Shown piece after piece: positions 3 to 64,000 of a stretch of 64,000 bases of DNA. The stretch covers positions 434,001 through 498,000 of IMG/VR virus record IMGVR_UViG_3300017917_001342; one strand, given 5' to 3'. The notes beneath the pieces are model-generated. The model saw only the letters and a program-made list of their open reading frames with translations. It did not search any database and had not been told where the DNA came from. Numbering within the stretch: position 1 is the first letter of the stretch; the number at the start of each line of letters is the position of its first letter. The translations under genes were made by a program, and so were the position numbers.

Positions 3-3000
3 CAGCGAGAGTATTTGCGTTTTTACAACAGATTTATATCTGCACTGTTCAATTTGTATTCTAACGGTTATACTCTTAATCAATCGCCTAGCGACTGGGT
101 AAGTGTTGCGCTTAAACAAATTAACCTTGGCAAAACTCCTGCTAGTGCATTTGCTAATAGTGGACCAAGTACAACACAGGGTGCGTACTGCGATGTTAAG
201 AGTACTGATCCTACATATGTACCTCCAACAGCTACTCGTCTGGGTTGTGCTCCTGCATATCTTCCAACTGTTTATTACGACCGTGACAATCTAGTAATAC
301 AATGCCATGATGGTGCAAGAATTGTAATGGCAAAAGATGGCTTACCATTGGGCGGTATTGCAAATGGCTTGGCTAGTACAATTAGTCCTGCACTGTTGAC
401 CAATCCTGTTGCAGCAGCATGGTTGCAGTTTGAAATAGATCTGTATTTTAACTTACCATCAAGATATAGAAATCCGCAGGCAACACTTGCATTGGATATC
501 AGAGAATACACACCTGGAAAATGGCGTCAAGGTGATTACACAGTAGACGAATTTAAACAAATCCTGTCTCCTATGTTTGATAAGTGGGTAATTACCAATC
601 AAGTTGATTATCGAGCAAACACTACCTACGACGCAAATGATCCATTCACCTGGAACTACCATAACAGTGCAGATAAAGATGGACTGCCTGTGCCTGGATA
701 TTATCAGGGAATTTATCGCTGGTTCTACGACACAGACAGACCACATACACATCCTTGGGAAATGTTAGGTTTCACACAAGAACCAGATTGGTGGACAGTT
801 GAATACGGTGCAGCACCTTACACCGCAGGCAACGCAGTTATGTGGGAAGACCTAAGAGATGGCTATATAAGACAAGGACCAAGAGCAGGTTACCATCCTA
901 CTTGGGCAAGACCTGGTCTTATGTCATGTATACCAGTTGACAACCAAGGAAATCTATTGCCGCCGCTTGCAGCAGGCACAGTAACAAGTTTGCCTAGCAG
1001 TCAACAAGCACAAGCTGAGTGGGTATTTGGGGATGGGTCTCCGGTAGAATCTGTATGGATATACAGCAACGACTATAATTTCTCTATAGCAGAATACAGT
1101 TACTTGATGAAACCTGCACAGTTCATCGAATACAACTGGGACACAATACGCAGTAAATTAGTGTTTGGTGATCAACCTACTGGACAGTGGGTTTACATTG
1201 ATACCAACAACCGTCGACCAAACGGAGAATTTTATGTACACAGAGAAAATCCGTTAGCAATAGGCGGTAACATACATATACCAAACGAAAGTACGTTAAG
1301 CTACTTTGGTAGTTGTGGTGTTCAACACTGGATAAGCGAGTACCTTGTTAATAGAAATCTCAGTGTAACTCAATATTTCGGTAATATTATAAGAGGTACT
1401 AATGTACAACTTGCTCACCAAATGGGCAGTTTTGTCAGTAGTAATCTTTACTTAACTGCTGATAGTTTTGGTCAAATTGGTTATAAGAGTCAGATAGTAC
1501 CAGCAGAAAACGTAAAAACATATCTGTATAAAAGTTCCAGCATTAAAACAGCGTTCTACACTGGTGTAATCATTACACAGTTAAAAAATGGTTATCGTGT
1601 TGTAGGATACGACGGTGTTAAGCAGTATTTTGAAATCATACCAAGCAATGCGTTTGGGCCAAAGAGCTATGTTGTTGTAGGCAACGAACGTGTAGTATGG
1701 TTTAAACAGGGTGTTGACACTGTTCAACAGATACCATATGGTTATGTGTTTGGTACTAAACAAGAAGTTTTTGACTTCTTAATTGGTTTACAGCGTTTCC
1801 AAGAGCTAGAAGGTTGGGTATTTGACACATATAATAACGACGGAAACTATGTATATGATTGGCAACAAAGTGCTAAAGAATTCCTGTTCTGGAGTCAAGG
1901 TAACTGGGCAAATGGCAATTTTATTGCACTCAGTCCGCTTGCTAATCGTGTAAAATTCCTACAACGTTTTGGCAATATACAGTTTGTCAACGGTATTGTT
2001 GGCGGTACATATCCGCTGCTAGATAAAACTGGTAGTCCTATACAAGGTCAAAACGTAGAAGTATTGCGATACGATGATGAAATTGTAGTTGCTACAACAA
2101 ACATACAAAGCATCTATGGAATACGACTGTTTGCAACCACGCTAGAAAGTATTGTTGTCATAGACAATCAGACAGCGTTTGGAGATATAATTTACGATCC
2201 ATTATATAATCAAGCGCAACCGAGATTAAAACTCTATGCATATCGTACCAATGATTGGAACGGCCGAGTAGATGCACCCGGATATTTCTTGTACCAAAAT
2301 GGTACAGATAACCAGTGGAATCTAGTTGCTAACTTTGAAAAAACTGCTAACGATTTCAGAAAATACTTCAACATAGAACAACCTAAAAACTATGTTACGT
2401 TTGATCCGGTATCTGGTAATTTGGTACAAGCAAGCACAAGTCTTGCAGTTATTGATAATCAGCCTATATCAGAAATAAGCAAACATCTCATAGGTTACCA
2501 GCAAAGAGGATACCTACAAAATCTATTATTAGAAGATAGCACTGAGTTTCAATTCTATCAAGGGTTTATTAGACAAAAAGGTACACGAGGTGCCATTGAC
2601 AAAATACTACGTAATGACAGTGTAATACCTGTCACAAGTGACTTTGTGTATTATGAAGAATATGCGTTACGTATTGCAAGATTTGGTGACACTGCTCTTA
2701 ACATTGGTATTGATTTTATCATACCACAGTCGCTATATGTCAATGACCCGCAACAGATAACAGTGTACGGTACTCAAGGAACTGATAGAGACCTTGATGG
2801 TATCATAGTGCTTATACCTAATGATCCAAGAATTGTAGTACCGCCGCAGAGTTATAGTAGTGTAACCAATCCGTTATTCCCTACACGACCACAAAATGAC
2901 GAATACCGAGACAATGACTATCCAACTACTGGTTACGTTTTAATCGGAGAAACTGACTACACAGTAACAAACACTGCTGCTCTTACCAGTTTGTATAGTA

Positions 3001-6000
3001 CACAATTAGAGTCCAATGTCAGACTTAAAGACGGCGACACCATATGGCAATTTGTTGATGATCAAAACAGTTGGACAGTGTGGCAATATTCAAAAGCCAA
3101 TGTAAACATTGTCAACACATCACCGATTATATTGTCCGGTCAATCTACTGTTATCAACGCAAGCGGTAATGTAGGTGTGTCGCCGGGCGATATTGTAGTA
3201 TTGACAGGTATAAGCAACGTCAATGCGTTGGAAGGTACATGGACTGTTGGTAACATCATAGGCGATGGTAATAGCTTTACAGTTGACACTACTACATTCA
3301 CAGTTGGATCTGGTGGTGAATATTATGCATATAAAAAAGTGCGTTTTGACGACACTGCTGCTAGAGATGCATATCCACCGTTTGGTGGATGGAAGCAAGG
3401 TGATCTAGCCTGGGTCGACAAGACAAATATTGGTCTGCAAGGTTGGGCAGTTTATGAGTATGTAAACAATGCATGGATGCCTAAGCGACTTGAACAACCA
3501 AAAGTTGATGCGGCATTGATGCTTCAAGCTAAACTATACAATAAAAATCAATTAAACGTCTATGGTGATTTAGAATACTATGATCCAGCCAAAGGCTTTA
3601 TACCTAAGCAAGCAAGAAATAATATAAACTTTTCATCTCTATATGATCCAGCATCATACACAGATGGTGATCCAATGCTGTATCCTATAAACTCTTCAAG
3701 AGCATGGGGTCCAGAACATGTTGGCCAAACATGGTGGGATCTAAATGCTGTTCGCTATTATGATTATGAAATAGGTGATACTGCATATCGTTGGCAGCAT
3801 TGGGGAGAAATTGCAACTGACACAACCGTAGATGTGTACGAATGGGTGCAAAGTCCAGTGCTTCCAACTAAATGGGCAGAATTTGTAAAAAATGGATCAA
3901 ATTTTAATCAATATGGTATAGACTATACTCCAAGTGGCACAGTTCTTAATGCAGATAATCCAGCATGGACTACTGCAACAACATACACTGCTGCTGGTAC
4001 TCCTACTACCTACTATTACTTCTGGGTAAAAAATGCATACACAATACCATTCCCACCCGGAAGAGCCGTAACTACCATAGAAATATCAAACCTTATAGCT
4101 GATCCAACTGCATATGGGGTTCCGTGGTATGCTGCTATAGATGATAGAAACATAATAGTTGCAAATGTCGGTAGCATGCTGGTTGCCGATAGTACAGTTC
4201 TTAGTTTGCTCTATACACATAAAGCAAACGAGCAAGTGGACTTTAAAGAGTGGGATCTGGTAAGAGAAAATGATCCCACTAGCATGCCTGCTGACTATTA
4301 TTGGACTAAACTGAAAAACAGTTTAACTGGTAAAGATGGTCTCAGTAATATTGTACCAGATCCATATCTCAGTGATTTGATGAGATATGGTACACTTATA
4401 CGTCCAAGACAAAGTTGGTTTAAAGACCGTACTGCTGCTGCTGCAACATATGTTACCAAAGCAAACCAGTTGCTTCTTGATATATTGCTAGTACCAGATT
4501 CAAACCGCAGCACCTGGGTTGATTATTTCTACGCTGCTGAACCACCACCTGAGGCAGATTACACTGTAGGTACAATCAGCAGTAGAAATGCACTAGGCGG
4601 TACTATCAGTGATGGTAGCACAGTGTTGGTACTTGGCGGCGCAGATACTGCAAATCTTTGGATACTGTATGAATATTCATACAATGGCGGTAACTATCTG
4701 TGGACTGCGATTCGTGTACAAGAATACAACACTCCGAACTACTGGTCGTTTGTTGACTGGTATATGCCAGGATCTGGTGTAACTGCTAACACTATTCCTA
4801 CATATACAGTACCCGACTTGGCAAGCAGAATTACCTATGCTGGAATGCAAAACATCACGGTTAAAGTACTCAACATTGGTGATGGCCGTTGGGCTATATA
4901 TCGCTGGGGTAGTTTTGACGGCATTAATGGGTGGGTAACTGTTGGTTACCAAGATGGTACAATTCAAATCAATGATGGCATCTACAACGGCACTATCAAC
5001 ACTATGATGTGGGATACTACACCGTTTGACAGTGTTACATTTGACATCTATCCATATATAGAATTTGGTTACATCATTGACGGTTTGAGATATTCAGTGT
5101 TCGAAGACATTGATCCTCATAACTCATCTGGCAGCGCACCACTTAACAATCTATTCTTTACTATGATAAACTATGTGTTGGTAGAGCAAGGATTTGTTGA
5201 TTGGATAATCAAAACCAGTTACATTGTCCTTAAAGGTTTCAATATACCTCTAAGTACAAGTACTCTTTATAAGCCAGATAGTACAAGTTCGTTGTTGGCC
5301 TACATCAATGAAGTCAAACCATACCATGCCAAGGTGCGCGATTTTGTTACAGGTCGCACTTGGCAAGACAATGCCTATGTACATTCTACCGATTTTGATA
5401 ATCCTGCAAACGTATCAGTCTCAACAAACATTGCATATAGCAATGTAGACTGGCAAAACAATTATCTTACAAATCCGCAGCTTATACGTACACTAAAAAC
5501 CAAATTGATATTTGACCGAGTAGCTTCATTCCCAGAAGGCTGGGATACTAAACCTTGGGCCTCTGTTGGTTGGCAGCTTGAATCTGGTGCATTGAACCCA
5601 GAATTGATTGATTGGGGTGCCTGGACTCGTATTCAAGAATACTATGCACCTGGTCCGGATATGATAAGAAAAGATGATCCAAACTTGATCACTAATAGTG
5701 ATTACAGAGGCATCATCATTGACAGTATAGGTTTTAGATTCAGACCAGGCTGGGATCTTGCACCATGGGATTCGATAACTGGTTGGCAAGCAGACCAACG
5801 CAGTTTTGACAACTATCTTGATTTAATCATTGAAGGTGGTGTTGCGCCTCAATATGATTACTACTACGGCACAGGTACCAAAGTGTCGTTCAAGCTATCG
5901 AGAATACCACAGGACCCAGCAAGTGTTGTAGTATGGTCGGATCAGGTACTGCGAGACTATGGTGTGGATTGGATAATACCAAACCACGTTACATCTATGT

Positions 6001-8909
6001 TAATAGTACAAGGTGGTTCTCTGTATAGTGTAGGAGACAAGCTACAACTTGATTTCGAACCATACAATTCACCTACCTGTGTTACAGTAACTGAAGTTGA
6101 TGTCAATGGTGCAATCGTTTCAGTATCTATTGACACTAAAGGTCAATATGACATATTCACTGGTACAGAACTGCCATTGATTTACAGACCATATTACTAT
6201 GGTAGTGGTACAGGTGCTATTGTTAAACCTGTATGGGGCAGTAACACACTGGTATTTAGAAATCCACCAAGCAGTAATGCTTCACCTAATGTGTATGTAC
6301 TGTATGTTGGTACTACATTTATTGAAGCACCTACTGGTTCGCTTGATATCATTACAGATGGCAATCAATTTGTACAACCATATATTGCAGAAGATCATGC
6401 TGAGGAACTCTACACTACAAATATTCTAGAAAATATCAGAATGGACACCTACACAGAGCCTGCAGGTGGTGCACCAGTCATTTACATGAGAGTGTACCAG
6501 TTGAATGGTTTACAGGACCAATTTGATATGGGCCTACGTCCTATGAATACCAGCAGTGTTATTGTACAAAAAGACGGTGTGGTGTTAACATACGGTTTAG
6601 CAAATGATTACATTATCAATTGGGAAAGTAACCGTGTGGTGTTCTTACTACCGCCAACTGGTACATCACTACAGATAATGACTATATCCTCCGGTGGTAC
6701 TGGAACCGGAATTTACAATCCAATAGTTGTTAACAACGGTATAGGCTATGCTACTGGTGATATTGTTACATTTGCAGGCGGCAACGTTGTAGATTATAAT
6801 TTTGCATCTGTACAAGTAACTGCTGTAATGGCATCGCAATTAGAAATTGTAAGCAGTGGTAACGGTTATGCAGTTGGCGATGTTCTGATATTAGAAGACG
6901 ATTTTGCAACAGCAAAAACCTATGCTGTAGAATTAACTGTTACAGGTGTTGCAACCAATGGCGCAATAACAACTGTGGAGATTACTCAATCTGGTGAATA
7001 TCAATATACACCGTTATCAAACGTATGGCGCACTTCCGGTAACGGAACCGGTGCAGTAATTGATATACTTTGGGGTATTGAAAGTGTATCAAGCGTTAAC
7101 ACTGGTCTTTATATAAATCATCCGGAAACACCAATTCAACAATTGACTACAACTGGTAACGGTGTAGATGCAACATTCTCTTCGTTGTATACATTTGTAC
7201 GATGCCAAAATGTGTTCAAAGCAAATGGTTCGGTAAATCAATTTGAAATAGATTTCCCTGTTCCAAACAACGACACTAGTATGTTACTGGTAACAGTTGA
7301 CGGTGTGGTAACTAACTTTGTAAATGCAAACGGTCGTGACATAACAGTAATAAACGTACCGCCTGCAAACAGTATTGTTAGCATCACATTGTTTACAAGT
7401 AACAATTTCAGTGTTGTAAATGACCAGACAGTTATTTTACAAACTGGCATTTATGCTTATGCATTGTCTAGTTTGCCATACAGTACAACACCTCCATACT
7501 TGAGCACTACAGTAACACTGAATGGTAATGAATTAACTGCACCATACAGCGACCTGTTTAAAGCAAACGGATATGTAAACGAATACACTGCAACATACAT
7601 GCCATCTAATACTGCATATTTGCAAGTATGGCTCAATGGTTATCTGTTAACAGAGAACACAGAATACACAATTTCTGGTAATAAGGTAATATTCTATGTT
7701 GCACCAACAGCAGGTGCAATTGTTGTGCTTCTAGTAACAGACCCAACATATCCATATGATTATACTATAGAAGGTAACTTTATACGATTGGCAACAACTG
7801 TACCGTTTGTGAACGGCGACGAACTTAAAATAGTAACTTACAGCGAAGATACTAGTTATAAGTTTAGAACACAGACTTTTGCTGGTCCTATGTATCCTAT
7901 AGTACCTGGCAATGCGCCCGGTACATATCTATTAGCAGATAGACCGTGGAACGACAATGCCTTGATGGTCTGGGTTAACAACACGATACAAACCCTAATG
8001 TACGACTATAGATATGAAATAACAGATGGTATATCTGGTTGGGACGTAACACCTTGGGACACATATGGTTGGAATGCTGAATTTGCAGGCGACGGTGTAA
8101 TTATATTTGGTGACAATATTGCACATAGTTCAAGCGACACCGTTTATGTACAATACATGAGTGGTATGCCACAGAAGGTTGCAACCGCATTCAGAACCGT
8201 GAATACTGGCAATACAACCGTCAACAGCATTGCAATTAACAATGCTAGAAGCACCGTACTGCTATCAAATATGTCTGTGCTAGCTGATGCAATAGAAGTA
8301 TCGGACTATACAGTATTGAGCATGCCAACTGAATCTCAACCTGGTGCAGTGTGGATCAACAACGAACGAATTGCATTCTGGACAGTTGACTATGCACCTA
8401 CTATTGAATATCCAAATCGTGCATTCTTAAAAACATTACAGCGCGGTACGTACAACACACCAAGTGGTAATGTAAGCACATTGTATAACACGATATTTTA
8501 CGATGGCGATGGTCAGACCACATACTTTGCAACAGCGGAAGGTACACAGCCATTAGGCGGACCCGAAGTAGTTTATGTAGGAAATGCAATACAAGTGGAC
8601 GTTACTGTCGATTCTGATATAGGTACATACAGTATTGTGATTAATCCCGACGGATATCCAGCTGGCAGATATGTTAAATTTGAAACTGCACCACCATCTG
8701 GTTGGAGAAACGTTAGACTGTGTGCTCCTACATTAGAAGCAAAAATCACTAGTTTTGTTAGCCATCCAGTAAATTCGACTGTATTGGATGGCGGGTATGA
8801 CGTAGAAATACCAGGCGGATACGGATGGCAACCTGCACCAAATGGTTTGCAATACAATAAAACAGCTATGGCAAACTTCCTATTAGAGAACTCTGGTACA
8901 AGGAACTAA
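3..8909 (+). CDS. Giant virion structural protein, probable baseplate wedge/hub (5'-truncated by the window edge)
   Basis: The frame is open from base 3, so the true start lies upstream. >2960 aa, rich in beta-strand/Tyr/Trp, with repeated YxGxGxxxxF and DYxIxxNxxxF modules and GWDxxPWD motifs. Followed by other structural genes. Resembles large baseplate proteins of jumbo myophages (recall). Confidence 0.7.
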   Translation, partial: QREYLRFYNRFISALFNLYSNGYTLNQSPSDWVSVALKQINLGKTPASAFANSGPSTTQGAYCDVKSTDPTYVPPTATRLGCAPAYLPTVYYDRDNLVIQCHDGARIVMAKDGLPLGGIANGLASTISPALLTNPVAAAWLQFEIDLYFNLPSRYRNPQATLALDIREYTPGKWRQGDYTVDEFKQILSPMFDKWVITNQVDYRANTTYDANDPFTWNYHNSADKDGLPVPGYYQGIYRWFYDTDRPHTHPWEMLGFTQEPDWWTVEYGAAPYTAGNAVMWEDLRDGYIRQGPRAGYHPTWARPGLMSCIPVDNQGNLLPPLAAGTVTSLPSSQQAQAEWVFGDGSPVESVWIYSNDYNFSIAEYSYLMKPAQFIEYNWDTIRSKLVFGDQPTGQWVYIDTNNRRPNGEFYVHRENPLAIGGNIHIPNESTLSYFGSCGVQHWISEYLVNRNLSVTQYFGNIIRGTNVQLAHQMGSFVSSNLYLTADSFGQIGYKSQIVPAENVKTYLYKSSSIKTAFYTGVIITQLKNGYRVVGYDGVKQYFEIIPSNAFGPKSYVVVGNERVVWFKQGVDTVQQIPYGYVFGTKQEVFDFLIGLQRFQELEGWVFDTYNNDGNYVYDWQQSAKEFLFWSQGNWANGNFIALSPLANRVKFLQRFGNIQFVNGIVGGTYPLLDKTGSPIQGQNVEVLRYDDEIVVATTNIQSIYGIRLFATTLESIVVIDNQTAFGDIIYDPLYNQAQPRLKLYAYRTNDWNGRVDAPGYFLYQNGTDNQWNLVANFEKTANDFRKYFNIEQPKNYVTFDPVSGNLVQASTSLAVIDNQPISEISKHLIGYQQRGYLQNLLLEDSTEFQFYQGFIRQKGTRGAIDKILRNDSVIPVTSDFVYYEEYALRIARFGDTALNIGIDFIIPQSLYVNDPQQITVYGTQGTDRDLDGIIVLIPNDPRIVVPPQSYSSVTNPLFPTRPQNDEYRDNDYPTTGYVLIGETDYTVTNTAALTSLYSTQLESNVRLKDGDTIWQFVDDQNSWTVWQYSKANVNIVNTSPIILSGQSTVINASGNVGVSPGDIVVLTGISNVNALEGTWTVGNIIGDGNSFTVDTTTFTVGSGGEYYAYKKVRFDDTAARDAYPPFGGWKQGDLAWVDKTNIGLQGWAVYEYVNNAWMPKRLEQPKVDAALMLQAKLYNKNQLNVYGDLEYYDPAKGFIPKQARNNINFSSLYDPASYTDGDPMLYPINSSRAWGPEHVGQTWWDLNAVRYYDYEIGDTAYRWQHWGEIATDTTVDVYEWVQSPVLPTKWAEFVKNGSNFNQYGIDYTPSGTVLNADNPAWTTATTYTAAGTPTTYYYFWVKNAYTIPFPPGRAVTTIEISNLIADPTAYGVPWYAAIDDRNIIVANVGSMLVADSTVLSLLYTHKANEQVDFKEWDLVRENDPTSMPADYYWTKLKNSLTGKDGLSNIVPDPYLSDLMRYGTLIRPRQSWFKDRTAAAATYVTKANQLLLDILLVPDSNRSTWVDYFYAAEPPPEADYTVGTISSRNALGGTISDGSTVLVLGGADTANLWILYEYSYNGGNYLWTAIRVQEYNTPNYWSFVDWYMPGSGVTANTIPTYTVPDLASRITYAGMQNITVKVLNIGDGRWAIYRWGSFDGINGWVTVGYQDGTIQINDGIYNGTINTMMWDTTPFDSVTFDIYPYIEFGYIIDGLRYSVFEDIDPHNSSGSAPLNNLFFTMINYVLVEQGFVDWIIKTSYIVLKGFNIPLSTSTLYKPDSTSSLLAYINEVKPYHAKVRDFVTGRTWQDNAYVHSTDFDNPANVSVSTNIAYSNVDWQNNYLTNPQLIRTLKTKLIFDRVASFPEGWDTKPWASVGWQLESGALNPELIDWGAWTRIQEYYAPGPDMIRKDDPNLITNSDYRGIIIDSIGFRFRPGWDLAPWDSITGWQADQRSFDNYLDLIIEGGVAPQYDYYYGTGTKVSFKLSRIPQDPASVVVWSDQVLRDYGVDWIIPNHVTSMLIVQGGSLYSVGDKLQLDFEPYNSPTCVTVTEVDVNGAIVSVSIDTKGQYDIFTGTELPLIYRPYYYGSGTGAIVKPVWGSNTLVFRNPPSSNASPNVYVLYVGTTFIEAPTGSLDIITDGNQFVQPYIAEDHAEELYTTNILENIRMDTYTEPAGGAPVIYMRVYQLNGLQDQFDMGLRPMNTSSVIVQKDGVVLTYGLANDYIINWESNRVVFLLPPTGTSLQIMTISSGGTGTGIYNPIVVNNGIGYATGDIVTFAGGNVVDYNFASVQVTAVMASQLEIVSSGNGYAVGDVLILEDDFATAKTYAVELTVTGVATNGAITTVEITQSGEYQYTPLSNVWRTSGNGTGAVIDILWGIESVSSVNTGLYINHPETPIQQLTTTGNGVDATFSSLYTFVRCQNVFKANGSVNQFEIDFPVPNNDTSMLLVTVDGVVTNFVNANGRDITVINVPPANSIVSITLFTSNNFSVVNDQTVILQTGIYAYALSSLPYSTTPPYLSTTVTLNGNELTAPYSDLFKANGYVNEYTATYMPSNTAYLQVWLNGYLLTENTEYTISGNKVIFYVAPTAGAIVVLLVTDPTYPYDYTIEGNFIRLATTVPFVNGDELKIVTYSEDTSYKFRTQTFAGPMYPIVPGNAPGTYLLADRPWNDNALMVWVNNTIQTLMYDYRYEITDGISGWDVTPWDTYGWNAEFAGDGVIIFGDNIAHSSSDTVYVQYMSGMPQKVATAFRTVNTGNTTVNSIAINNARSTVLLSNMSVLADAIEVSDYTVLSMPTESQPGAVWINNERIAFWTVDYAPTIEYPNRAFLKTLQRGTYNTPSGNVSTLYNTIFYDGDGQTTYFATAEGTQPLGGPEVVYVGNAIQVDVTVDSDIGTYSIVINPDGYPAGRYVKFETAPPSGWRNVRLCAPTLEAKITSFVSHPVNSTVLDGGYDVEIPGGYGWQPAPNGLQYNKTAMANFLLENSGTRN

Positions 8910-25453: not shown

Positions 25454-25481
25454 AAAAAGGACGGTAAAACCGTCCTTTTTT
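25454..25481. terminator. Bidirectional rho-independent terminator
   Basis: AAAAA-GGACGGT-AAA-ACCGTCC-TTTTTT between convergent genes. Confidence 0.9.
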
Positions 25482-26517: not shown

Positions 26518-26703
26518 TTATACTATACTATTATAGATATGCATCGCATAATGGCCTAAAAAACCAAAAGATCCTAGAAACGACACAGTGCTGACAACTA
26601 AATCGTTGTGAAATTTTTCACATAATATACCAACGCAGCCGGCTACGATGAACACAGCAAATAACAAAGCAAACATACCGAGGTACTTCAACATTTTACG
26701 CAT
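26518..26703 (-). CDS. Small membrane protein (two hydrophobic segments)
   Basis: 61 aa; preceded by TATAAATA (26739-26746, minus strand). Confidence 0.55.
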   Translation of the reverse strand: MRKMLKYLGMFALLFAVFIVAGCVGILCEKFHNDLVVSTVSFLGSFGFLGHYAMHIYNSIV

Positions 26704-26738
26704 CGCATAACTCGCCCCATTAACATATGGTATTAAAC

Positions 26739-26746
26739 TATTTATA
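26739..26746 (-). promoter_or_regulatory. T4 late promoter consensus TATAAATA
   Basis: Exact match upstream of the 26703 start. Confidence 0.6.
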
Positions 26747-26757
26747 GTACGAGTTAA

Positions 26758-26783
26758 ATGTACCGCCTAATGTGGCGGTACAT
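26758..26783 (-). terminator. Stem-loop, probable terminator
   Basis: ATGTACCGCC-TAATGT-GGCGGTACAT, a 10-bp stem just after the stop at 26788; short U tract. Confidence 0.6.
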
Positions 26784-26787
26784 CTAG

Positions 26788-28102: not shown

Positions 28103-29386
28103 TTACGAGACTGCACCGATTTCACTAACACCTTCTGCGTGATCGTAGTAAGCATACTCGCCGAACGGCGGCTTAACACGAGTCTTAGCACCTTCTGTGA
28201 TAACCCACAGCGTGTCGCAGTAGTTTTCGGGACCCCAAGTACCAAACGGATAACCGTCGGTGAACACCACAGCCTTCTTAGGCTCAATGTCGTTCTCCAT
28301 CCAGTAATTCCAGAACGCCATGAAGTCAGTGCCGCCGCCACCTTTGCATTCGTAGCTAAGCAGATCATCAGCAGTGTCCTTGGTAAACACCTGATAGTTG
28401 TAGGTCTGCGTATCGAAGCAGATGATGCTGATAGTAAAGTCGTTGTAGCAGCTCATCATACCGTAGACTTCGCTAAGGAAATCCTTGGCCATACGATCGC
28501 TGATAGACCCCGACATGTCAATTGCAACTGCAATGTCAATAGTCTCATCCTTGTCAAGCACAGGAAGGAACACACCTGAATACATGTGCTTACGGTTAGG
28601 ACGCATCCAAGTAAAGTCATCAGTGATGCAGCTTTGGATGTTTTGTTGCAGCAGATCGCGCCAGCTGATCTTAGGCTCAACAAGATCGTCAATCAGTCGC
28701 TGCATGCTAGCAGGCATCTTACCCGCAGCAGCCTGCGCAGCTTGCAGAACCTTGTTCTTGAATTCGTCACGGATCTTCTTGAGATCTTCTTCGCTGATCT
28801 TAATGGGATTGCCATTGCCATCAACAGGCTGCTTACCACCTTTACCGTTCTTGTTGTTACCGTCCTTACCCATTTCAAGGTGAACGTCGAGTGTCATCTG
28901 CTTCTTGACCTTGCGCTTTTCAAGATCGTCATACACAGCTTCTGACGTCCAACCAAGATAGCGTTCGTCGTAAAGACCAACACGCTGGTTAGTTTCGCCG
29001 TTTTCATCAACGTCCATTACCTTCTTAGTAGGCATCTTACCGATCTTGTCAGTAGTCAGCATACCGTTGATAATGTAGTCGTTGGCCATGTTCCACCAGC
29101 TGGGATCACGATGTGTACGACGACCAAAGTGATCAAGTGCAACGTGCAGCACTTCGTGACACAGAACGAACACGATCTCATCGACATCCAGTTCTGCGAA
29201 AAACTCACGGTTGAAGTAGATGTTACGGCCATCAACCGCAGCAGTCTTACACCAACCCGAATCAGTTGCATCAACGAGCGGCAGTTGCATAGTCAGCGTA
29301 CCAAAGAACGGCTGCGAGAACAGCAGTTTAAGCCGTGCCTGGCTGATCTTCTTCTTAACAGCTTCTTTGTTAACAGTCATTGCCAT
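28103..29386 (-). CDS. DUF2201-type metallopeptidase-like/VWA domain protein
   Basis: HEVLH (HExxH); MIDAS motif DMSGS; GGGGTDF; VFTDGY; GGAGGA RBS. Confidence 0.85.
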   Translation of the reverse strand: MAMTVNKEAVKKKISQARLKLLFSQPFFGTLTMQLPLVDATDSGWCKTAAVDGRNIYFNREFFAELDVDEIVFVLCHEVLHVALDHFGRRTHRDPSWWNMANDYIINGMLTTDKIGKMPTKKVMDVDENGETNQRVGLYDERYLGWTSEAVYDDLEKRKVKKQMTLDVHLEMGKDGNNKNGKGGKQPVDGNGNPIKISEEDLKKIRDEFKNKVLQAAQAAAGKMPASMQRLIDDLVEPKISWRDLLQQNIQSCITDDFTWMRPNRKHMYSGVFLPVLDKDETIDIAVAIDMSGSISDRMAKDFLSEVYGMMSCYNDFTISIICFDTQTYNYQVFTKDTADDLLSYECKGGGGTDFMAFWNYWMENDIEPKKAVVFTDGYPFGTWGPENYCDTLWVITEGAKTRVKPPFGEYAYYDHAEGVSEIGAVS

Positions 29387-29424: not shown

Positions 29425-29454
29425 AAACGAGCGTCAATCACAATGACGCTCGTT
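29425..29454 (-). terminator. 12-bp stem-loop between the AAA+ and VWA genes
   Basis: AAACGAGCGTCA-ATCACAA-TGACGCTCGTTT. Confidence 0.6.
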
Positions 29455-29469
29455 TTGTTGTCGTTGATC

Positions 29470-31374: not shown

Positions 31375-31654
31375 CTATCTGCTGACCGCTAGTTAACAGT
31401 ACAACAGTGAATTTGTCAGTCTTAAACAGGCTGTTTAACTTTGTGCAAAGATTAAACGCATGTCCCGGATTACTAAAACTGACTTTGCGATATTTTGGAC
31501 CTGGGTAACTGATCAAACTGTTTAGAGTGCGAAGATTGATCGGTTTATTCTCATAAAAAACTGCGTATATACCAGTGGCTTCTAATATTTCTTCAGCTTT
31601 GTAAGTCTTTGGATCTGTGTAAGAAAGTAACACATTTGGCTTTGGTCTTGACAA
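31364..31654 (-). CDS. Hypothetical protein (96 aa, MSRPKP...)
   Basis: AGGAG RBS, TTG start, TAAATA at 31679-31684. Confidence 0.75.
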   Translation of the reverse strand: MSRPKPNVLLSYTDPKTYKAEEILEATGIYAVFYENKPINLRTLNSLISYPGPKYRKVSFSNPGHAFNLCTKLNSLFKTDKFTVVLLTSGQQIDEK

Positions 31655-31697
31655 TATCGTAACTCCTAGACAGCACGATATTTATCAATTACAGGGT

Positions 31698-33442: not shown

Positions 33443-34033
33443 TTAATTGTCGGTTTTATACCAAAACCAGCATTCGTTAGGTGCTTGCTTTAAAAGGGAA
33501 AGATCCCAACCTTTGCTTTTGTACCAACTTGAAACTGCAAAATTCACACTGAACAAATTGCTGTCATGCCCTGCAATAATGCCGCCAGTTCGTACCTTTG
33601 GATACCAACTGTCAAGGTCGGACAACACCTGCTTCATGCTGTGTCCACCATCTATAAACACAAAGTCGTATACATCGTCATCTAACATACTAGCAGCAGT
33701 TTGACTATCTTCTTTTATCAACTTAAAGCGATCGCCCATCAACGGTATGTTTTTCAACAACACACGGTAGTTCAACTCTTGTTCAAGTTTGGTAATTGGT
33801 CTATCCCAATCAATGTATGGTTGGTAATGGTCAACACCTATCAGAGAACTGATATTCGGACATTCCTGCAACATATACCAACTGTTTATACCTCGATTGA
33901 CACCTATTTCTATGCCAATTGCTGGATAAGGTAATTTCTTAAGTTCTTTCACAATGCCACGAGCAGCCTGCTGTTTGTATATCGCAGGCCAATCGGCACT
34001 TTCTAATAATGAGTTAATAGATTTGTCGTTCAC
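33443..34033 (-). CDS. Class I SAM methyltransferase (Methyltransf_24-like)
   Basis: IEIGVNRG, DFVFIDGGH, GGIIAGHD. Confidence 0.8.
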   Translation of the reverse strand: MNDKSINSLLESADWPAIYKQQAARGIVKELKKLPYPAIGIEIGVNRGINSWYMLQECPNISSLIGVDHYQPYIDWDRPITKLEQELNYRVLLKNIPLMGDRFKLIKEDSQTAASMLDDDVYDFVFIDGGHSMKQVLSDLDSWYPKVRTGGIIAGHDSNLFSVNFAVSSWYKSKGWDLSLLKQAPNECWFWYKTDN

Positions 34034-34037
34034 ATAG

Positions 34038-34045
34038 TATTTATA
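34038..34045 (-). promoter_or_regulatory. T4 late promoter consensus TATAAATA, 4 nt before the GTG start
   Basis: Exact match overlapping the upstream stop codon. Confidence 0.6.
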
Positions 34046-34577
34046 TTGGTTTTTGCCATAACCAACTGGTAACTATGCCATAACCTTGATTTGGTACAGA
34101 CGGATCAACTTCCCTATGATCGGGTATCAATTCACAACAGGCCTGTTTGACGCCTTCATGTTGCGGATGATTGTAGTCATGTCCGCCCATCCATCCTCCG
34201 GGTTTTACTTTTGGCAACCACGCAGTGATGTCTTGTACAACAGCTTCGTACGAATGATCACCATCTATCCATACAAAGTCTAAACTGTGATCTTCGTATT
34301 CAGTTGCAGCTTCTGTGCTAGGAATCTGTTTGTGAGTATAGCGTCCACAGACTTGAATCAAATTGTTGTTAAATTCAGTTTGATAGCCTACGTCAACACA
34401 GTCTAACTTGATGTTCTTGCCGCTATTAATAATCTCTACAAGCATGTATGCTGCACTTCTGCCCATGTAAGAACCGACCTCTACAAAATGTGCAGAGTCT
34501 GATACCTGTGCAATCATATCGTCGTAGATACCGGGATAGTCAAACCATCCTTCGATTTTGTTATAAAAGTGTTCCAT
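34041..34577 (-). CDS. Class I SAM methyltransferase (Methyltransf_24-like)
   Basis: VEVGSYMGRS, DFVWIDGDHSY, PGGWMGGHDY. Confidence 0.85.
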   Translation of the reverse strand: MEHFYNKIEGWFDYPGIYDDMIAQVSDSAHFVEVGSYMGRSAAYMLVEIINSGKNIKLDCVDVGYQTEFNNNLIQVCGRYTHKQIPSTEAATEYEDHSLDFVWIDGDHSYEAVVQDITAWLPKVKPGGWMGGHDYNHPQHEGVKQACCELIPDHREVDPSVPNQGYGIVTSWLWQKPI

Positions 34578-50763: not shown

Positions 50764-50784
50764 GATGCCGCCTAATACTTGAAT

Positions 50785-50790
50785 TATTTA
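50785..50790 (-). promoter_or_regulatory. Late promoter core TAAATA inside an RBS-sequestering hairpin (50766-50796)
   Basis: Minus strand reads TGCCGC-TAAATA-ATTCAAG-TATTA-GGCGGCA-TC-ATG. Confidence 0.65.
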
Positions 50791-50801
50791 GCGGCAGCGC
50801 A

Positions 50802-55841: not shown

Positions 55842-55871
55842 TTTTTTTAGGTAATCCGCCGTTTATGCCAT

Positions 55872-55877
55872 TAAATA
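55872..55877 (+). promoter_or_regulatory. Late promoter core TAAATA in the loop of an RBS-sequestering hairpin (55852-55897)
   Basis: TAATCCGCCGTTTATG ... CATAACGGATGGATTA flanks TAAATA; ATG at 55900. Confidence 0.65.
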
Positions 55878-55899
55878 TGTACATAACGGATGGATTAAC

Positions 55900-61463: not shown

Positions 61464-61640
61464 ATGAGAGCAACTGAATTCATAAATGAGTCAGGCGGAG
61501 CAGGCCGCGTTGTGCCAGGTGTGAATACCACACCTGATGTTGGACCGGATGAAATACCAAAGCAAGCTGCAAAGCTAGGTATGAAAACTGATAGAGACGG
61601 TAGACCGCCTATTGCTAGAACTGATGGGAAAATTGAATAA
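61464..61640 (+). CDS. 58-aa late protein (absent from the ORF track)
   Basis: Translates as MRATEFINESGGAGRVVPGVNTTPDVGPDEIPKQAAKLGMKTDRDGRPPIARTDGKIE*; bounded by a late promoter and a terminator. Confidence 0.8.
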   Translation: MRATEFINESGGAGRVVPGVNTTPDVGPDEIPKQAAKLGMKTDRDGRPPIARTDGKIE

Positions 61641-61641
61641 T

Positions 61642-61668
61642 AAAAAAGGGCGCCTAAGCGCCCTTTTT
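61642..61668. terminator. Bidirectional rho-independent terminator
   Basis: AAAAAA-GGGCGC-CTAA-GCGCCC-TTTTT between convergent genes. Confidence 0.9.
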
Positions 61669-61670
61669 AG

Positions 61671-61868
61671 TTAGATACGACTGCGTCGACTTGCAGCTTC
61701 TGCGTCTTCTTTTGTACGCTCAATTGCGATAGGAACCCACCGTTGCGGAATAGCAAGGCCGCTCTTGCGGTAATAGTCTAGATCAGCATCGGGATCATCT
61801 ACCTGAGCCCAAACTGTCCACTTACCATCAAAAGGACGCTGCGTAATTTCGTGTCGGGATTTTTCCAT
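61671..61868 (-). CDS. Hypothetical protein (65 aa)
   Basis: GAGG RBS; ends at the terminator. Confidence 0.65.
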   Translation of the reverse strand: MEKSRHEITQRPFDGKWTVWAQVDDPDADLDYYRKSGLAIPQRWVPIAIERTKEDAEAASRRSRI

Positions 61869-62491: not shown

Positions 62492-62519
62492 AGTATAACA
62501 CAGTGTTGTTAGTTGTCAA
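62492..62519 (-). promoter_or_regulatory. Sigma70-type promoter
   Basis: TTGACA-16-TATACT with TGn extended -10; GGAG RBS downstream. Confidence 0.75.
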
Positions 62520-63303
62520 CTGCCAATGTTAAGTTGAAAGTACCGTCTGTAACAACAACATGCCCGTCGCCACATTCGACATGATAAGAAGGACCTAGCA
62601 GCGATTGCAATGCAATGCTTTCTCTTAGTGCAGAGTTACCTATAGTAAGTCCGAATACTGGCATCGGAGATGTGCCTTTGCGCCAATCAGTGATTTGATA
62701 CACTCTGTCGCGGCCTCTGTCAGAAATACAAATCCAGTCGCCTTTGATTTCGACACTTTCTACTAGCGAATGCTTTAAAAACTCACCAACTTGTTCGTAG
62801 ATTTTTACTTCACCTGCTGGTGCAACTTCAAGTTTATCTTCTGGTGATTCAACCGGCGGCTCAGTTGTGTCGCCTTCAATCTCAATTTTGTCTGGATTTA
62901 GATTAACGTATTCTCTAACGTTGTCTTCGGTTAGATCTAAAAACTCGTCGTCGCCGAGACCATAAGGCTTGAATTTCCATTTGTTGACAAATGTTAGATT
63001 TTTCAGTTGATTTGCCATGTCTATTAAACGTGACGGATAATCTTCGTTTCTGGACATTTCCACGAACACCATGTAGAATCCGTCATCTGTTGGTGCAGGA
63101 CTAACTTCTGTGTCCAGCGGTCGTATGCTGCTTTTTTCTACAAACACACTTAGATCAGCTGCTGGATTTTTATCTTTTACATAAAATCCGGTAACAATTA
63201 CTCTGCGATCATCGATCTTGCTTTCATATTCGTCAACTGAAATCAACGGCAATACTAGATGTTCTAATGCACCTCGATCAAGACCTTCGTTTATTCTTTT
63301 CAT
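62509..63303 (-). CDS. Hypothetical protein (264 aa)
   Basis: ISVDEYESK...FYVKD...PAADL...YMVFVE; ATGA overlap with the upstream gene. Confidence 0.75.
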   Translation of the reverse strand: MKRINEGLDRGALEHLVLPLISVDEYESKIDDRRVIVTGFYVKDKNPAADLSVFVEKSSIRPLDTEVSPAPTDDGFYMVFVEMSRNEDYPSRLIDMANQLKNLTFVNKWKFKPYGLGDDEFLDLTEDNVREYVNLNPDKIEIEGDTTEPPVESPEDKLEVAPAGEVKIYEQVGEFLKHSLVESVEIKGDWICISDRGRDRVYQITDWRKGTSPMPVFGLTIGNSALRESIALQSLLGPSYHVECGDGHVVVTDGTFNLTLAVDN

Positions 63304-63812
63304 TGCTGTGGCGCTCCATCAGCATCAACACCTGCTGCTGCTGCGTCGTCAAGTGTTTCAACGTCAACTTCTTCTTCGTATTGGTCCATGATTTTATTAT
63401 CAATGTTTTGAACAAACTTACGAGGTATAAGCATATCTATCAGCCAAATCTTACGTTTTTTCATCTTTGGCTTTTTAGTACCTGGTTGGTAGTCAGCTTC
63501 GCTTTTTACCTTGACAGGATATTTTTCCAGTGCAACACGATATGAAATTTTTGTACCGTGCATAAGAAGTCTTAGACCGCCTTCGGGGTCTGGCATTTTT
63601 TCGTATGGATATTTCAGTGTGATCTTTACCCAATACTGTTTGGTATAAGGGCCAGCTACAACTTCACCAAGTTTCCAATTTTTGTAAACGTACAGGTTGT
63701 TACCATCGAGGTAATCCTCAATGTCAATTAGTATATCTACAAGATCTTCAGAGTCCGTAATTCTACGGACTACTTCTGCTGCTTTTGATGTGTTAAATTC
63801 TTCGTGTGCCAT
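63300..63812 (-). CDS. Hypothetical late protein (170 aa)
   Basis: Start moved from 63833 to the ATG at 63812, 5 nt after TATAAATA; LYVYKNW...GEVVAGP...MPDPEGG. Confidence 0.75.
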   Translation of the reverse strand: MAHEEFNTSKAAEVVRRITDSEDLVDILIDIEDYLDGNNLYVYKNWKLGEVVAGPYTKQYWVKITLKYPYEKMPDPEGGLRLLMHGTKISYRVALEKYPVKVKSEADYQPGTKKPKMKKRKIWLIDMLIPRKFVQNIDNKIMDQYEEEVDVETLDDAAAAGVDADGAPQQ

Positions 63813-63817
63813 GTAGA

Positions 63818-63825
63818 TATTTATA
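63818..63825 (-). promoter_or_regulatory. T4 late promoter TATAAATA within a perfect 12-bp inverted repeat (63804-63835)
   Basis: GTGTGCCATGTA-8 nt-TACATGGCACAC. Confidence 0.75.
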
Positions 63826-63848
63826 CATGGCACACAAGTTTCGTTATA

Positions 63849-64000
63849 TCATTCTTCGCCGTACATGCGAAGAATATCTGTTATCACAGGATGGCGTTCT
63901 ACACTGTCTTTATCAAACTTACAGATTCGTATACGGGACGATCCGTCGAAGCGATTAACAAAGTCTGCAAGTCCATTATTGTTCATACCTCTATCGCTTT
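63849..64000 (-). CDS. phoH: PhoH-family ATPase, C-terminal fragment (5'-truncated)
   Basis: Manual translation SDRGMNNNGLADF...KFDKDSVERHPVITDILRMYGEE* matches the PhoH C-terminus. Confidence 0.8.
   Translation of the reverse strand, partial: SDRGMNNNGLADFVNRFDGSSRIRICKFDKDSVERHPVITDILRMYGEE

What the first reader, a model, noticed from the sequence alone, without database searches (positions are those of the whole stretch)
63804..63835. Perfect 12-bp hairpin enclosing TATAAATA and burying the AUG: strongest case of a window-wide late-translation switch
Seen: GTGTGCCATGTA-TAAATATC-TACATGGCACAC on the minus strand, with the promoter at the stem/loop junction and the start codon in the 3' arm, right after phoH. 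The same logic appears at 26708, 31653, 50766 and 55852, i.e. at five junctions where a late promoter sits directly downstream of another gene on the same strand. Established: a few T4 genes use it. Inference: systematic use here, combined with leaderless initiation so that late RNA starts essentially at the AUG.
Basis: partly seen in the sequence, partly recalled or inferred. Interest (0 to 1): 0.66.

Follow-up and report, generated by a model that had tools for sequence, protein, structure and literature searches.

The report
Promoter-in-hairpin masking a leaderless start
In a 519-kb freshwater jumbo phage, a conserved hairpin between phoH and a virion-protein gene holds that gene's late promoter in its loop and its start codon in its stem, so only RNA begun at that promoter, right at the AUG, should be translatable; the hairpin trick is known from T4, but late genes without leaders were not found described.

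Summary
The hairpin is real. It is a perfect 12-bp stem with an 8-nt loop on the minus strand at 63835-63804. TATAAATA sits at the stem/loop junction and the SD-less ATG lies in the 3' arm, 36 nt after the phoH stop. It is not chance: five such repeats occur in the window against 0.15 in shuffles. Six relatives keep it, with 4-5 compensatory pair changes.

The genome encodes a gp55-like late sigma. TAAATA is 16-fold enriched upstream of genes. A sharp class of about 22 genes has TAAATA exactly 4-5 nt before the ATG, which predicts leaderless late mRNAs. T4 and Atu_ph07 lack this class.

The geometry matches the T4 e/soc/49/I-TevI switch: upstream-initiated RNA buries the AUG and own-promoter RNA cannot.

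The "systematic window-wide early/late switch" is only partly supported:
- Masking of start regions is modestly enriched genome-wide (p about 0.015 against matched controls).
- Only 2 of 18 co-directional leaderless genes are strongly buried.
- Most orthologous junctions lack a hairpin.
- phoH itself has only a conserved late-type promoter.

A boundary hairpin that serves phoH mRNA remains a serious rival. No RNA data exist.

The parts
63804..63835 (-). Whole stem-loop: perfect 12-bp stem and 8-nt loop. RNAalifold extends it to 14 pairs (63802-63837).
   Evidence: The hairpin alone is -21.1 kcal/mol. The sequence is unique in the 518-kb genome.
63824..63835 (-). 5' arm GTGTGCCATGTA. It lies wholly upstream of the predicted late start site, so it is absent from own-promoter RNA.
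   Evidence: The geometry follows from T4 promoter positions -13 to -6 (PMC1524935).
63818..63825 (-). gp55-type late promoter TATAAATA at the stem/loop junction, with 5 nt between its last A and the ATG.
   Evidence: TAAATA-N5-ATG is kept in L002, L003, L004, L006, L010 and L011.
63804..63815 (-). 3' arm TACATGGCACAC, holding the start codon and codons 2-3.
   Evidence: Compensatory changes alter codon 2 (Ala/Pro) and codon 3 (His/Gln).
63810..63812 (-). ATG start codon with no Shine-Dalgarno sequence; predicted 5' end of the late mRNA.
   Evidence: It is the only possible start in L002, L003, L004 and L006. An SD-like motif is found in 4% of the leaderless class against 60% of all genes.
63300..63812 (-). 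170-aa virion structural protein gene (phrog_12928), the regulated gene.
   Evidence: 3.8e-39. The Atu_ph07 orthologue gp306 is annotated as a virion structural protein.
62509..63303 (-). 264-aa virion structural protein gene (phrog_13138), overlapping the previous gene by 4 nt and probably co-transcribed with it.
   Evidence: The same gene pair occurs in Atu_ph07.
63849..64000 (-). 3' end of phoH. The gene runs beyond the window to genome 498607-498619; its stop TGA is at 63851-63849.
   Evidence: Its only upstream promoter motif is the late-type CATAAATA, conserved in relatives.
31648..31688 (-).
   Evidence: -12.2 kcal/mol. Opening cost 13.4 in read-through RNA against 5.5 in own RNA.
50766..50796 (-). 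The gene is tail-fibre-like.
   Evidence: The stem is kept in L096-L099 with a variable loop and one compensatory change. Opening cost 12.3 against 3.1.
55852..55897 (+).
   Evidence: -14.2 kcal/mol. Relatives L094 and L095 have different stems but again hold the motif in the loop.
26710..26754 (-). A separate terminator-like hairpin lies upstream at 26755-26786.

Best explanation
The element is a cis-acting RNA stem-loop. It ties translation of the virion-protein gene to firing of that gene's own gp55-type late promoter.

RNA that begins upstream, at the phoH promoter, carries both arms. It folds at about -21 kcal/mol, and the SD-less AUG then costs about 16 kcal/mol to expose. RNA polymerase carrying the phage late sigma starts at the TATAAATA inside the hairpin. 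With 5 nt between the motif and the ATG, the transcript begins at or within 1 nt of the A of AUG. That RNA lacks the whole 5' arm, has a free 5'-terminal AUG (0.3 kcal/mol to open), and should be translated as a leaderless mRNA.

Shown here: the structure, its selection, the promoter class and the fixed spacing. Inferred: the transcription start site, formation of the hairpin in RNA, and its effect on translation.

At this junction the upstream RNA is probably also late. The element therefore acts as an insulator between two late units rather than as an early/late timer. Elsewhere in the genome the same design does sit mainly at early-to-late junctions.
For: - Structure and rarity.
- Covariation: 94% of cells paired against 83% shuffled (0 of 500 shuffles as high). 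Pairs changed on both sides number 4 or 5 (RNAalifold), some at the cost of amino-acid changes. One U-G wobble in L011 fits the sense RNA only.
- Late promoter class: a gp55-like sigma, motif enrichment and depletion, and the same motif upstream of nearly all the roughly 80 orthologous genes inspected.
- Leaderless spacing: offsets 4 and 5 hold 31 of 204 motif copies, 21 of which open ORFs of 50 aa or more. T4 and Atu_ph07 have none with ATAAATA. A second complete jumbo phage has 23 matches against 3 in the control. The tail-tube gene keeps TATAAATA-N5-ATG in relatives at 70% identity.
- Opening energy: 16.0 kcal/mol in read-through RNA against 0.3 in own RNA.
- Genome-wide trend in co-directional but not divergent contexts, and against matched controls.
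- Junctions fed by an early promoter are masked in 6 of 7 cases, against 14 of 39 fed by a late promoter (p = 0.02).
- A twin site at genome 238782-239513 has a 17-pair stem with CTAAATA in the loop and the ATG in the 3' arm, and follows an early-promoter gene.
- The mechanism is established for T4 e, soc, 49 and I-TevI (PMC3014915).
Against: - No RNA data exist: no RNA run holds this sequence.
- An SD-less internal AUG should be poorly translated anyway, so the mask looks partly redundant.
- phoH has only a late-type promoter, so no temporal switch is needed here.
- Only 2 of 18 co-directional leaderless genes are strongly buried.
- L014 has the same phoH-to-gene junction with 5-nt spacing but no hairpin, and L012 has a terminator-like hairpin upstream of the promoter instead.
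- Hairpins are common throughout co-directional spacers and overlap early promoters just as often, so enclosure of the promoter could be a by-product of packing.
- Watson-Crick covariation cannot separate an RNA hairpin from a DNA palindrome.
Confidence: 0.55

Rival explanations
1. The hairpin is a boundary element that serves the upstream gene. It would act as a 3'-end stabiliser, processing site or weak terminator for phoH RNA, in a composite terminator-promoter arrangement like a PeSL. In a 36-nt spacer, a promoter that must sit 5 nt from the ATG can only fit inside the loop, so burial of the AUG would be a by-product.
For: - Stable hairpins are 2- to 9-fold denser in intergenic than in coding DNA, and occur in co-directional but hardly in divergent spacers.
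- Loop centres are spread evenly from -70 to +20 around late motifs.
- 17 of 38 early promoters are also overlapped by hairpins, where no start region can be masked (window 29425-29455).
- L012 has a 13-bp, T-tailed hairpin between phoH and the promoter.
- The tail-tube gene has a terminator, then the promoter, then the ATG.
- PeSLs are described in T4-like phages (PMC4122927).
Against: - There is no U-tract after the stem on the sense strand, in the window or in relatives.
- The stem reaches 9 nt into the coding sequence and is kept by changes that alter amino acids.
- Masking correlates with early-promoter-fed junctions.
- Start regions of promoter-bearing genes are more occluded than those of genes with similar spacers but no promoter.
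Confidence: 0.3
2. The element works as a DNA-level palindrome. It would be an operator for a dimeric regulator overlapping the late promoter, or a cruciform that modulates promoter opening (compare the hairpin promoters of phage N4).
For: - It is a perfect inverted repeat centred on the promoter.
- Watson-Crick covariation is equally expected for a symmetric operator.
- On the plus strand the same palindrome scores as terminator-like.
Against: - Promoter-enclosing stems at other sites share no half-site sequence.
- The sequence is unique in the genome.
- G-U pairs occur in L011, L094 and the twin site. Among strongly structured sites the sense strand is the more stable in 22 cases against 14 (p = 0.03).
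- The excess is absent in divergent contexts, where a DNA-level promoter feature would be equally needed.
Confidence: 0.08
3. The hairpin is a chance palindrome, or a relic of an insertion, without function.
For: An 8-nt direct repeat CGAAGAAT flanks the element at 63858-63851 and 63804-63797.
Against: - Only 0.15 such repeats are expected per window.
- It is conserved with compensatory changes across relatives at 73-86% amino-acid identity.
- The flanking repeat is absent in relatives.
- The sequence is not repeated elsewhere in the genome.
Confidence: 0.02

Closest known systems
T4 genes e (lysozyme), soc, 49 and I-TevI: start-region hairpins with late promoters in the 5' strand (Uzan and Miller 2010, PMC3014915)
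   Same: A TATAAATA late promoter lies in the DNA that encodes the 5' strand or loop of a helix sequestering the start region. Longer transcripts fold and are repressed, while late transcripts lack the 5' strand.
   Different: - In T4 the late RNAs keep an SD-bearing leader. Here the spacing predicts no leader, and only the AUG and two codons are buried.
- In T4 the long RNAs are early or middle. Here the upstream gene has a late-type promoter.
- There is no experimental proof here.
Aeh1 mobE hairpin sequestering the ribosome-binding site (Gibb and Edgell, cited in PMC3014915)
   Same: A hairpin masks the start region of a gene embedded in a longer transcript in a T4-like phage.
   Different: That case concerns a homing endonuclease inside nrd genes. 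It has an SD-bearing start region and is not leaderless.
PeSLs, composite early-promoter/stem-loop cassettes of T4-like phages (PMC2839356, PMC4122927)
   Same: A stem-loop and a promoter are fused at gene boundaries. This genome's early promoters (TTGACA-N14/15-TGCTAT) often overlap hairpins in the same way.
   Different: PeSLs carry sigma70-type early promoters, are repeated and mediate recombination. This element carries a late promoter, is unique in sequence, and overlaps the start codon.
Leaderless mRNAs such as lambda cI from PRM (from my own knowledge; reference 27 in PMC5312081 covers ribosome binding to a 5'-terminal AUG)
   Same: A 5'-terminal AUG without an SD, and the promoter-to-AUG distance fixed by the transcription start.
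   Different: Those are single genes driven by sigma70 promoters. Here it is a whole class of about 22 genes driven by a gp55-type promoter, including tail tube and tail fibre.
Phage N4 virion RNA polymerase hairpin promoters (from my own knowledge)
   Same: A promoter embedded in an inverted repeat.
   Different: The N4 hairpins are short DNA structures read by a dedicated single-subunit polymerase. Nothing here points to DNA-level recognition.

Membership tests
T4-type late-promoter/start-region-hairpin translational switch | A gp55-type late promoter (TATAAATA-like, -13 to -6) directly upstream of the gene, in a phage that encodes gp55 | tested here: met
   TATAAATA at 63825-63818. gp55-like sigma: phrog_12791 at 6e-84, and T4 gp55 by phmmer at 1e-6. 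Motif statistics.
T4-type late-promoter/start-region-hairpin translational switch | A stable helix sequesters the SD and/or AUG in longer transcripts | tested here: met
   Prediction only. 12-14 bp, -21 kcal/mol, AUG in the 3' arm, opening cost 16.0 kcal/mol. Covariation.
T4-type late-promoter/start-region-hairpin translational switch | The late transcript starts inside the structure and lacks its 5' strand | tested here: inconclusive
   The geometry fits if +1 lies 6 nt after the motif, as in T4 (PMC1524935), and the sharp 4-5 nt spacing class supports this. No 5' ends could be mapped.
T4-type late-promoter/start-region-hairpin translational switch | Read-through RNA of an earlier temporal class enters the gene | tested here: not met
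   At this junction phoH has only a conserved late-type motif and no early-type promoter. Elsewhere in the genome the feature is met: 6 of 7 early-fed junctions are masked.
T4-type late-promoter/start-region-hairpin translational switch | Translation is repressed on long RNA and relieved on late RNA | not testable with these tools
   This needs reporter, toeprint or Ribo-seq data.
Leaderless mRNA | The transcription start is at, or within a few nt of, the start codon | tested here: inconclusive
   Inferred from promoter spacing only.
Leaderless mRNA | No Shine-Dalgarno sequence, and AUG as the start codon | tested here: met
   No SD in the window or in the six relatives. Across the class, 4% have an SD-like motif against 60% of all genes, and 23 of 24 start with ATG.
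Intrinsic (Rho-independent) terminator | A GC-rich hairpin followed by a U-tract on the transcribed strand | tested here: not met
   There is no T-run after the stem on the minus strand. The scan calls it terminator-like only on the plus strand.
PeSL (early-promoter stem-loop cassette) | A sigma70-type early promoter joined to a stem-loop, repeated in the genome | tested here: not met
   The promoter is late-type and the sequence is unique. PeSL-like elements do exist at this genome's early promoters.
Known RNA family (Rfam) | A match to a curated covariance model | tested here: not met
   No match at E of 1 or below in 63600-64000.

The most novel reading that the evidence does not exclude
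A clade of freshwater jumbo phages runs a programmed class of leaderless late genes. gp55-type promoters sit exactly 4-5 nt from the ATG for about a quarter of promoter-bearing late genes, including tail tube, tail fibre and virion proteins. Late in infection much structural-protein synthesis would then start from 5'-terminal AUGs. Hairpins such as this one would insulate those AUGs from the AU-rich, otherwise unstructured context they have on read-through RNA. T4 and Atu_ph07 lack this class, and no description of it was found in the searched literature.
Probability: 0.5. Interest if true: 0.75.

Novelty: new variant of a known kind. Interest (0 to 1): 0.55.

Why it matters
The hairpin-plus-late-promoter switch has been studied in a handful of T4 genes. 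Here it is conserved by covariation in uncultured jumbo phages and is joined to something T4 does not do: late promoters placed so that the mRNA starts at the AUG.

If 5'-end mapping confirms this, gp55-type transcription would be linked to SD-independent, 70S-type initiation for major structural genes. That bears on three things:
- how giant phages with large tRNA sets take over translation;
- gene calling in phage metagenomes, where starts without an SD are mis-set;
- the design of compact promoter/insulator parts.

If it is not confirmed, the site is still a well-supported new example of a known regulatory hairpin.

Tried and rejected
- RNA evidence: no RNA run holds the region. Laying DNA contigs gave a variant table cut off at 63651, before the hairpin, so it says nothing about microdiversity in the stem.
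- Twin site (genome 238782-239513): no relatives in viral contigs, so no covariation test was possible.
- A profile of MFE-paired positions around promoters was uninformative, because about half of all positions pair anyway.
- The sense-versus-antisense stability test on sites chosen by sense energy was biased. The unbiased version is only weakly positive.
- Translation-factor or ribosomal-protein genes that might explain leaderless translation: no Pfam S21 or IF3_C hit. No gp45 C-domain hit either. These absences are weak evidence.
- Identity of the 170-aa protein: no Pfam family, no relative among solved structures, and only a PHROG 'virion structural protein'.
- No Rfam family matches.
- Mobile-cassette idea (8-nt flanking direct repeat): rejected, because the repeat is absent in relatives and the element is unique.
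- An early-type promoter for phoH: the best candidate, TTAACA-N16-TGCCAT, has a poor -10 element and was not accepted.
- PMC150520 (T4 genome review) is not held. The -13 to -6 position was taken from PMC1524935 instead.
- Two family-scan calls failed on wrong coordinates and one script failed on an index error. All three were repeated correctly.

Full report
**What is there.** On the minus strand, 63835-63804 reads GTGTGCCATGTA / TAAATATC / TACATGGCACAC. This is a perfect 12-bp inverted repeat with an 8-nt loop. TATAAATA lies at 63825-63818 and spans the end of the 5' arm and the loop. The ATG at 63812-63810 lies in the 3' arm and opens a 170-aa frame (63812-63300). The gene just upstream is a PhoH homologue (Pfam PF02562, 2e-68) whose stop is at 63851-63849, which leaves a 36-nt spacer. 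The 170-aa product and the next gene (62509-63303) match the PHROG families phrog_12928 and phrog_13138, both 'virion structural protein'. The same pair follows phoH, two genes further on, in Agrobacterium phage Atu_ph07, where both are annotated as virion structural proteins.

**Chance.** A 91-nt RNA around the site folds at -26 kcal/mol, z = -5.06, and none of 200 shuffles does as well. The window holds 5 perfect inverted repeats of 12 bp or more with a short spacer, against 0.15 (maximum 1) in dinucleotide shuffles. The sequence occurs once in the genome, so it is not a repeat family.

**Genome context.** The window is positions 434001-498000 of a 518,643-bp contig with an 89-bp terminal overlap, 40.7% GC, 55 tRNA genes and a tmRNA gene. 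This is a jumbo phage, found in pond and freshwater metagenomes. I called 645 genes with a simple dicodon model.

**The promoter class.**
- TAAATA occurs in 82 oriented intergenic regions against 5 expected (16.5-fold), and ATAAATA is 28-fold enriched.
- Genome-wide the hexamer is about 3-fold depleted (204 found, 567-708 expected). Of the copies, 59% lie in the 10.5% of the genome outside called genes.
- The genome encodes a gp55-like late sigma at 419800-420666 (phrog_12791 at 6e-84, phrog_234 at 6e-21, T4 gp55 by phmmer at 1e-6).
- Nearly all of the roughly 80 orthologous genes inspected in IMG/VR and metagenome contigs (34-86% identity) carry [A/C/G]TAAATA upstream.

The motif is therefore the late promoter of this phage group. 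Exact TATAAATA is not enriched in the window (4 found, 6.15 expected); the core TAAATA is what matters. A separate early class, TTGACA-N14/15-TGCTAT, is also clear.

**Leaderless spacing.**
- The distance from the end of TAAATA to the start codon has a sharp peak at 4 nt (8 genes) and 5 nt (14 genes). A broad second peak at 18-31 nt carries SD sequences.
- Without any annotation, ATG follows TAAATA at offset 4 or 5 in 31 of 204 copies, against 0-5 at neighbouring offsets. Of these, 21 open frames of 50 aa or more.
- T4 late promoters lie at -13 to -6 (PMC1524935), so a 5-nt gap puts +1 on the A of ATG.
- The class has an SD-like motif in 4% of cases, against 60% for all genes, and 23 of 24 members start with ATG.
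- It includes a tail-tube gene, a tail-fibre gene, virion proteins and a homing endonuclease.
- T4 and Atu_ph07 have no ATAAATA-N4/5-ATG that opens an ORF.
- A second complete 364-kb jumbo phage from IMG/VR has 23 matches against 3 in the reversed-pattern control.
- The tail-tube gene of relatives at 70% identity keeps the order terminator, TATAAATA, 5 nt, ATG.
- About half of the 75 distinct orthologous junctions of the 170-aa gene have spacing of 8 nt or less.

I found no paper that describes leaderless gp55-type late mRNAs. That search covers open-access text only.

**Selection on the hairpin.** Six relatives keep the phoH-to-gene synteny, TAAATA-N5-ATG and the stem: L010 at 86%, L011 at 76%, and L002, L003, L004 and L006 at about 73% amino-acid identity. 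On the 12 pairs, 94% of cells pair against 83% in shuffles (0 of 500 as high). Sliding the partner by 1-3 columns gives 15-50%, and 4 pairs change on both sides. RNAalifold independently predicts 14 pairs, 5 of them with compensatory changes. Some changes alter codon 2 (GCA Ala to CCG Pro) and codon 3 (CAC His to CAG Gln). L011 has one U-G pair that would be a C-A mismatch on the other strand. The events trace to only two or three lineages, so the count is small.

**Does it work like the T4 switch?** In T4, genes e, soc, 49 and I-TevI have start-region helices whose 5' strand is encoded where late promoters lie. Long early or middle RNAs are repressed about 100-fold for e, while late RNAs lack the 5' strand (PMC3014915). 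Here the computed cost of exposing the AUG and the next three nucleotides is 16.0 kcal/mol in read-through RNA and 0.3 in RNA that starts at the AUG. The geometry therefore meets the sequence-level criteria.

One criterion fails at this junction. phoH sits after a divergent 116-bp region that holds only a late-type motif (CATAAATA), a GGAGG SD and a TTG start. This arrangement is conserved in L003, L004, L006 and L010, and there is no early-type promoter. The long RNA is thus probably late too. The element would then insulate two late units rather than time expression.

A leaderless AUG without an SD should be weakly used inside a long RNA anyway. On my own knowledge that SD-less initiation depends on local lack of structure, the AU-rich promoter just upstream would otherwise leave this AUG in an open context, and the stem would close it. 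This last step is inference.

**Is it systematic?**
- Against flank shuffles, hairpins that enclose the motif are enriched: mean -6.4 against -3.5 kcal/mol, and 28 sites at -10 or lower against 7 expected.
- Start-region nucleotides paired to partners upstream of the predicted start site are enriched in co-directional contexts (5.71 against 2.91, 5.5 sd) but not in divergent ones (2.85 against 3.26; Mann-Whitney p = 0.007).

Stricter controls weaken this.
- Stable simple hairpins are common across co-directional spacers, and their loop centres are spread evenly from -70 to +20 around the motif.
- Early promoters are overlapped by hairpins as often (17 of 38).
- Against matched genes, the opening cost for late-promoter genes with 15-45-nt leaders has a median of 7.9 kcal/mol. 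Co-directional genes with a similar spacer but no promoter have 6.3 (p = 0.015), and tightly packed genes have 5.7 (p = 0.0003).
- Of 18 co-directional leaderless genes, only this one and the gene at genome 238782-239513 are strongly buried (16.0 and 14.4 kcal/mol). That second site has a 17-pair stem with CTAAATA in the loop and the ATG in the 3' arm.
- Of 75 orthologous junctions, only the 7 closest show strong burial. L014 has phoH and 5-nt spacing but no hairpin, and L012 has a T-tailed hairpin upstream of the promoter.

In favour of the timing idea, junctions whose upstream unit has an early promoter are masked in 6 of 7 cases, against 14 of 39 for late-fed ones (Fisher p = 0.02).

**The four other named sites.** All four show the pattern in weaker form, and all four genes have leaders and SD sequences.
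- Site 50766: the stem TGCCGC/GCGGCA is kept in four relatives with a variable loop and one compensatory change.
- Site 55852: two relatives have unrelated stems that again hold the motif in the loop.
- Seven other co-directional late junctions in the window are not masked, with opening costs of 0.5-7.7 kcal/mol.

**Rivals.**
- The main rival is a boundary hairpin that serves phoH RNA as a stabiliser, processing site or weak terminator, packed over the promoter for lack of space. It explains the contrast between co-directional and divergent contexts, the hairpins at early promoters (PeSL-like, PMC4122927) and the L012 arrangement. It does not explain the missing U-tract on the sense strand, the reach into the coding sequence at the cost of residues, or the link with early-fed junctions.
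- A DNA-level palindrome (operator or cruciform) fits the symmetry. It does not fit the lack of a shared half-site, the G-U pairs, or the weak sense-strand bias (22 against 14, p = 0.03).
- Chance is excluded by the covariation.

**Verdict.** Its scope is narrower than claimed, and the temporal framing does not hold at this junction. The more unusual result is the leaderless late-promoter class.

Noticed in passing
Whole genome (G000:C1), outside the window: 50823-164763, 300236-300312, 311343-311751: This 518.6-kb phage carries 55 tRNA genes. One has anticodon CTA (129519-129593), which ARAGORN calls tRNA-Pyl and which could act as an amber suppressor. There is also a tmRNA gene with tag ANDNVAPSYALAA.
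   Followed up: no
Genome 116846-116883 (outside the window); also 107102-107152: Two divergent genes 38 bp apart each have a late motif 5 nt from their ATG. The spacer reads CAT-ggtaa-TATTTATA-12 nt-CATAAATA-ttgac-ATG. It consists of little more than two back-to-back leaderless promoters.
   Followed up: partly
window 29425-29455 (minus-strand gene 28103-29386): A perfect 12-bp inverted repeat overlaps the -35 element of an early-type promoter (TTGACG-N14-TGCTAT). Genome-wide, 17 of 38 co-directional early promoters are overlapped by stable hairpins, which resembles the PeSL cassettes of T4-like phages.
   Followed up: partly
Genome 102575-104029 (locus L090): A 506-aa ORF has a strong Sigma70_r2 domain (72 bits). 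It is a full-length sigma70-family factor encoded by the phage, in addition to the gp55-like late sigma.
   Followed up: no
window 3-8909 (+): A very large ORF of at least 2968 aa runs off the 5' end of the window. It was not characterised.
   Followed up: no
window 33443-34033 and 34041-34577 (-): Two adjacent ORFs both match the same region of a DNA methyltransferase PHROG (phrog_2675). This may be a split or duplicated gene. The downstream ORF starts with GTG 4 nt after a TATAAATA, in a 7-nt spacer.
   Followed up: no
window 63851-63875 (-): The last codons of phoH form a 9-bp stem, ATTCTTCGC/GCGAAGAAT. L010 keeps it but the L002 group and L011 do not, so it is probably incidental.
   Followed up: partly
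window 63858-63851 and 63804-63797 (-): An 8-nt direct repeat CGAAGAAT flanks the spacer plus hairpin. It is absent in relatives, so it is probably chance rather than a target-site duplication.
   Followed up: yes
window 25454-25480 and 61638-61673: Strong A-tract/stem/T-tract hairpins lie between convergent genes. They look like bidirectional terminators.
   Followed up: no
window 26518-26703 (-): A 61-aa ORF with an N-terminal hydrophobic segment ending in AGC looks like a lipoprotein or membrane protein. My gene caller missed it. It is the likely target of the TATAAATA at 26746-26739.
   Followed up: partly
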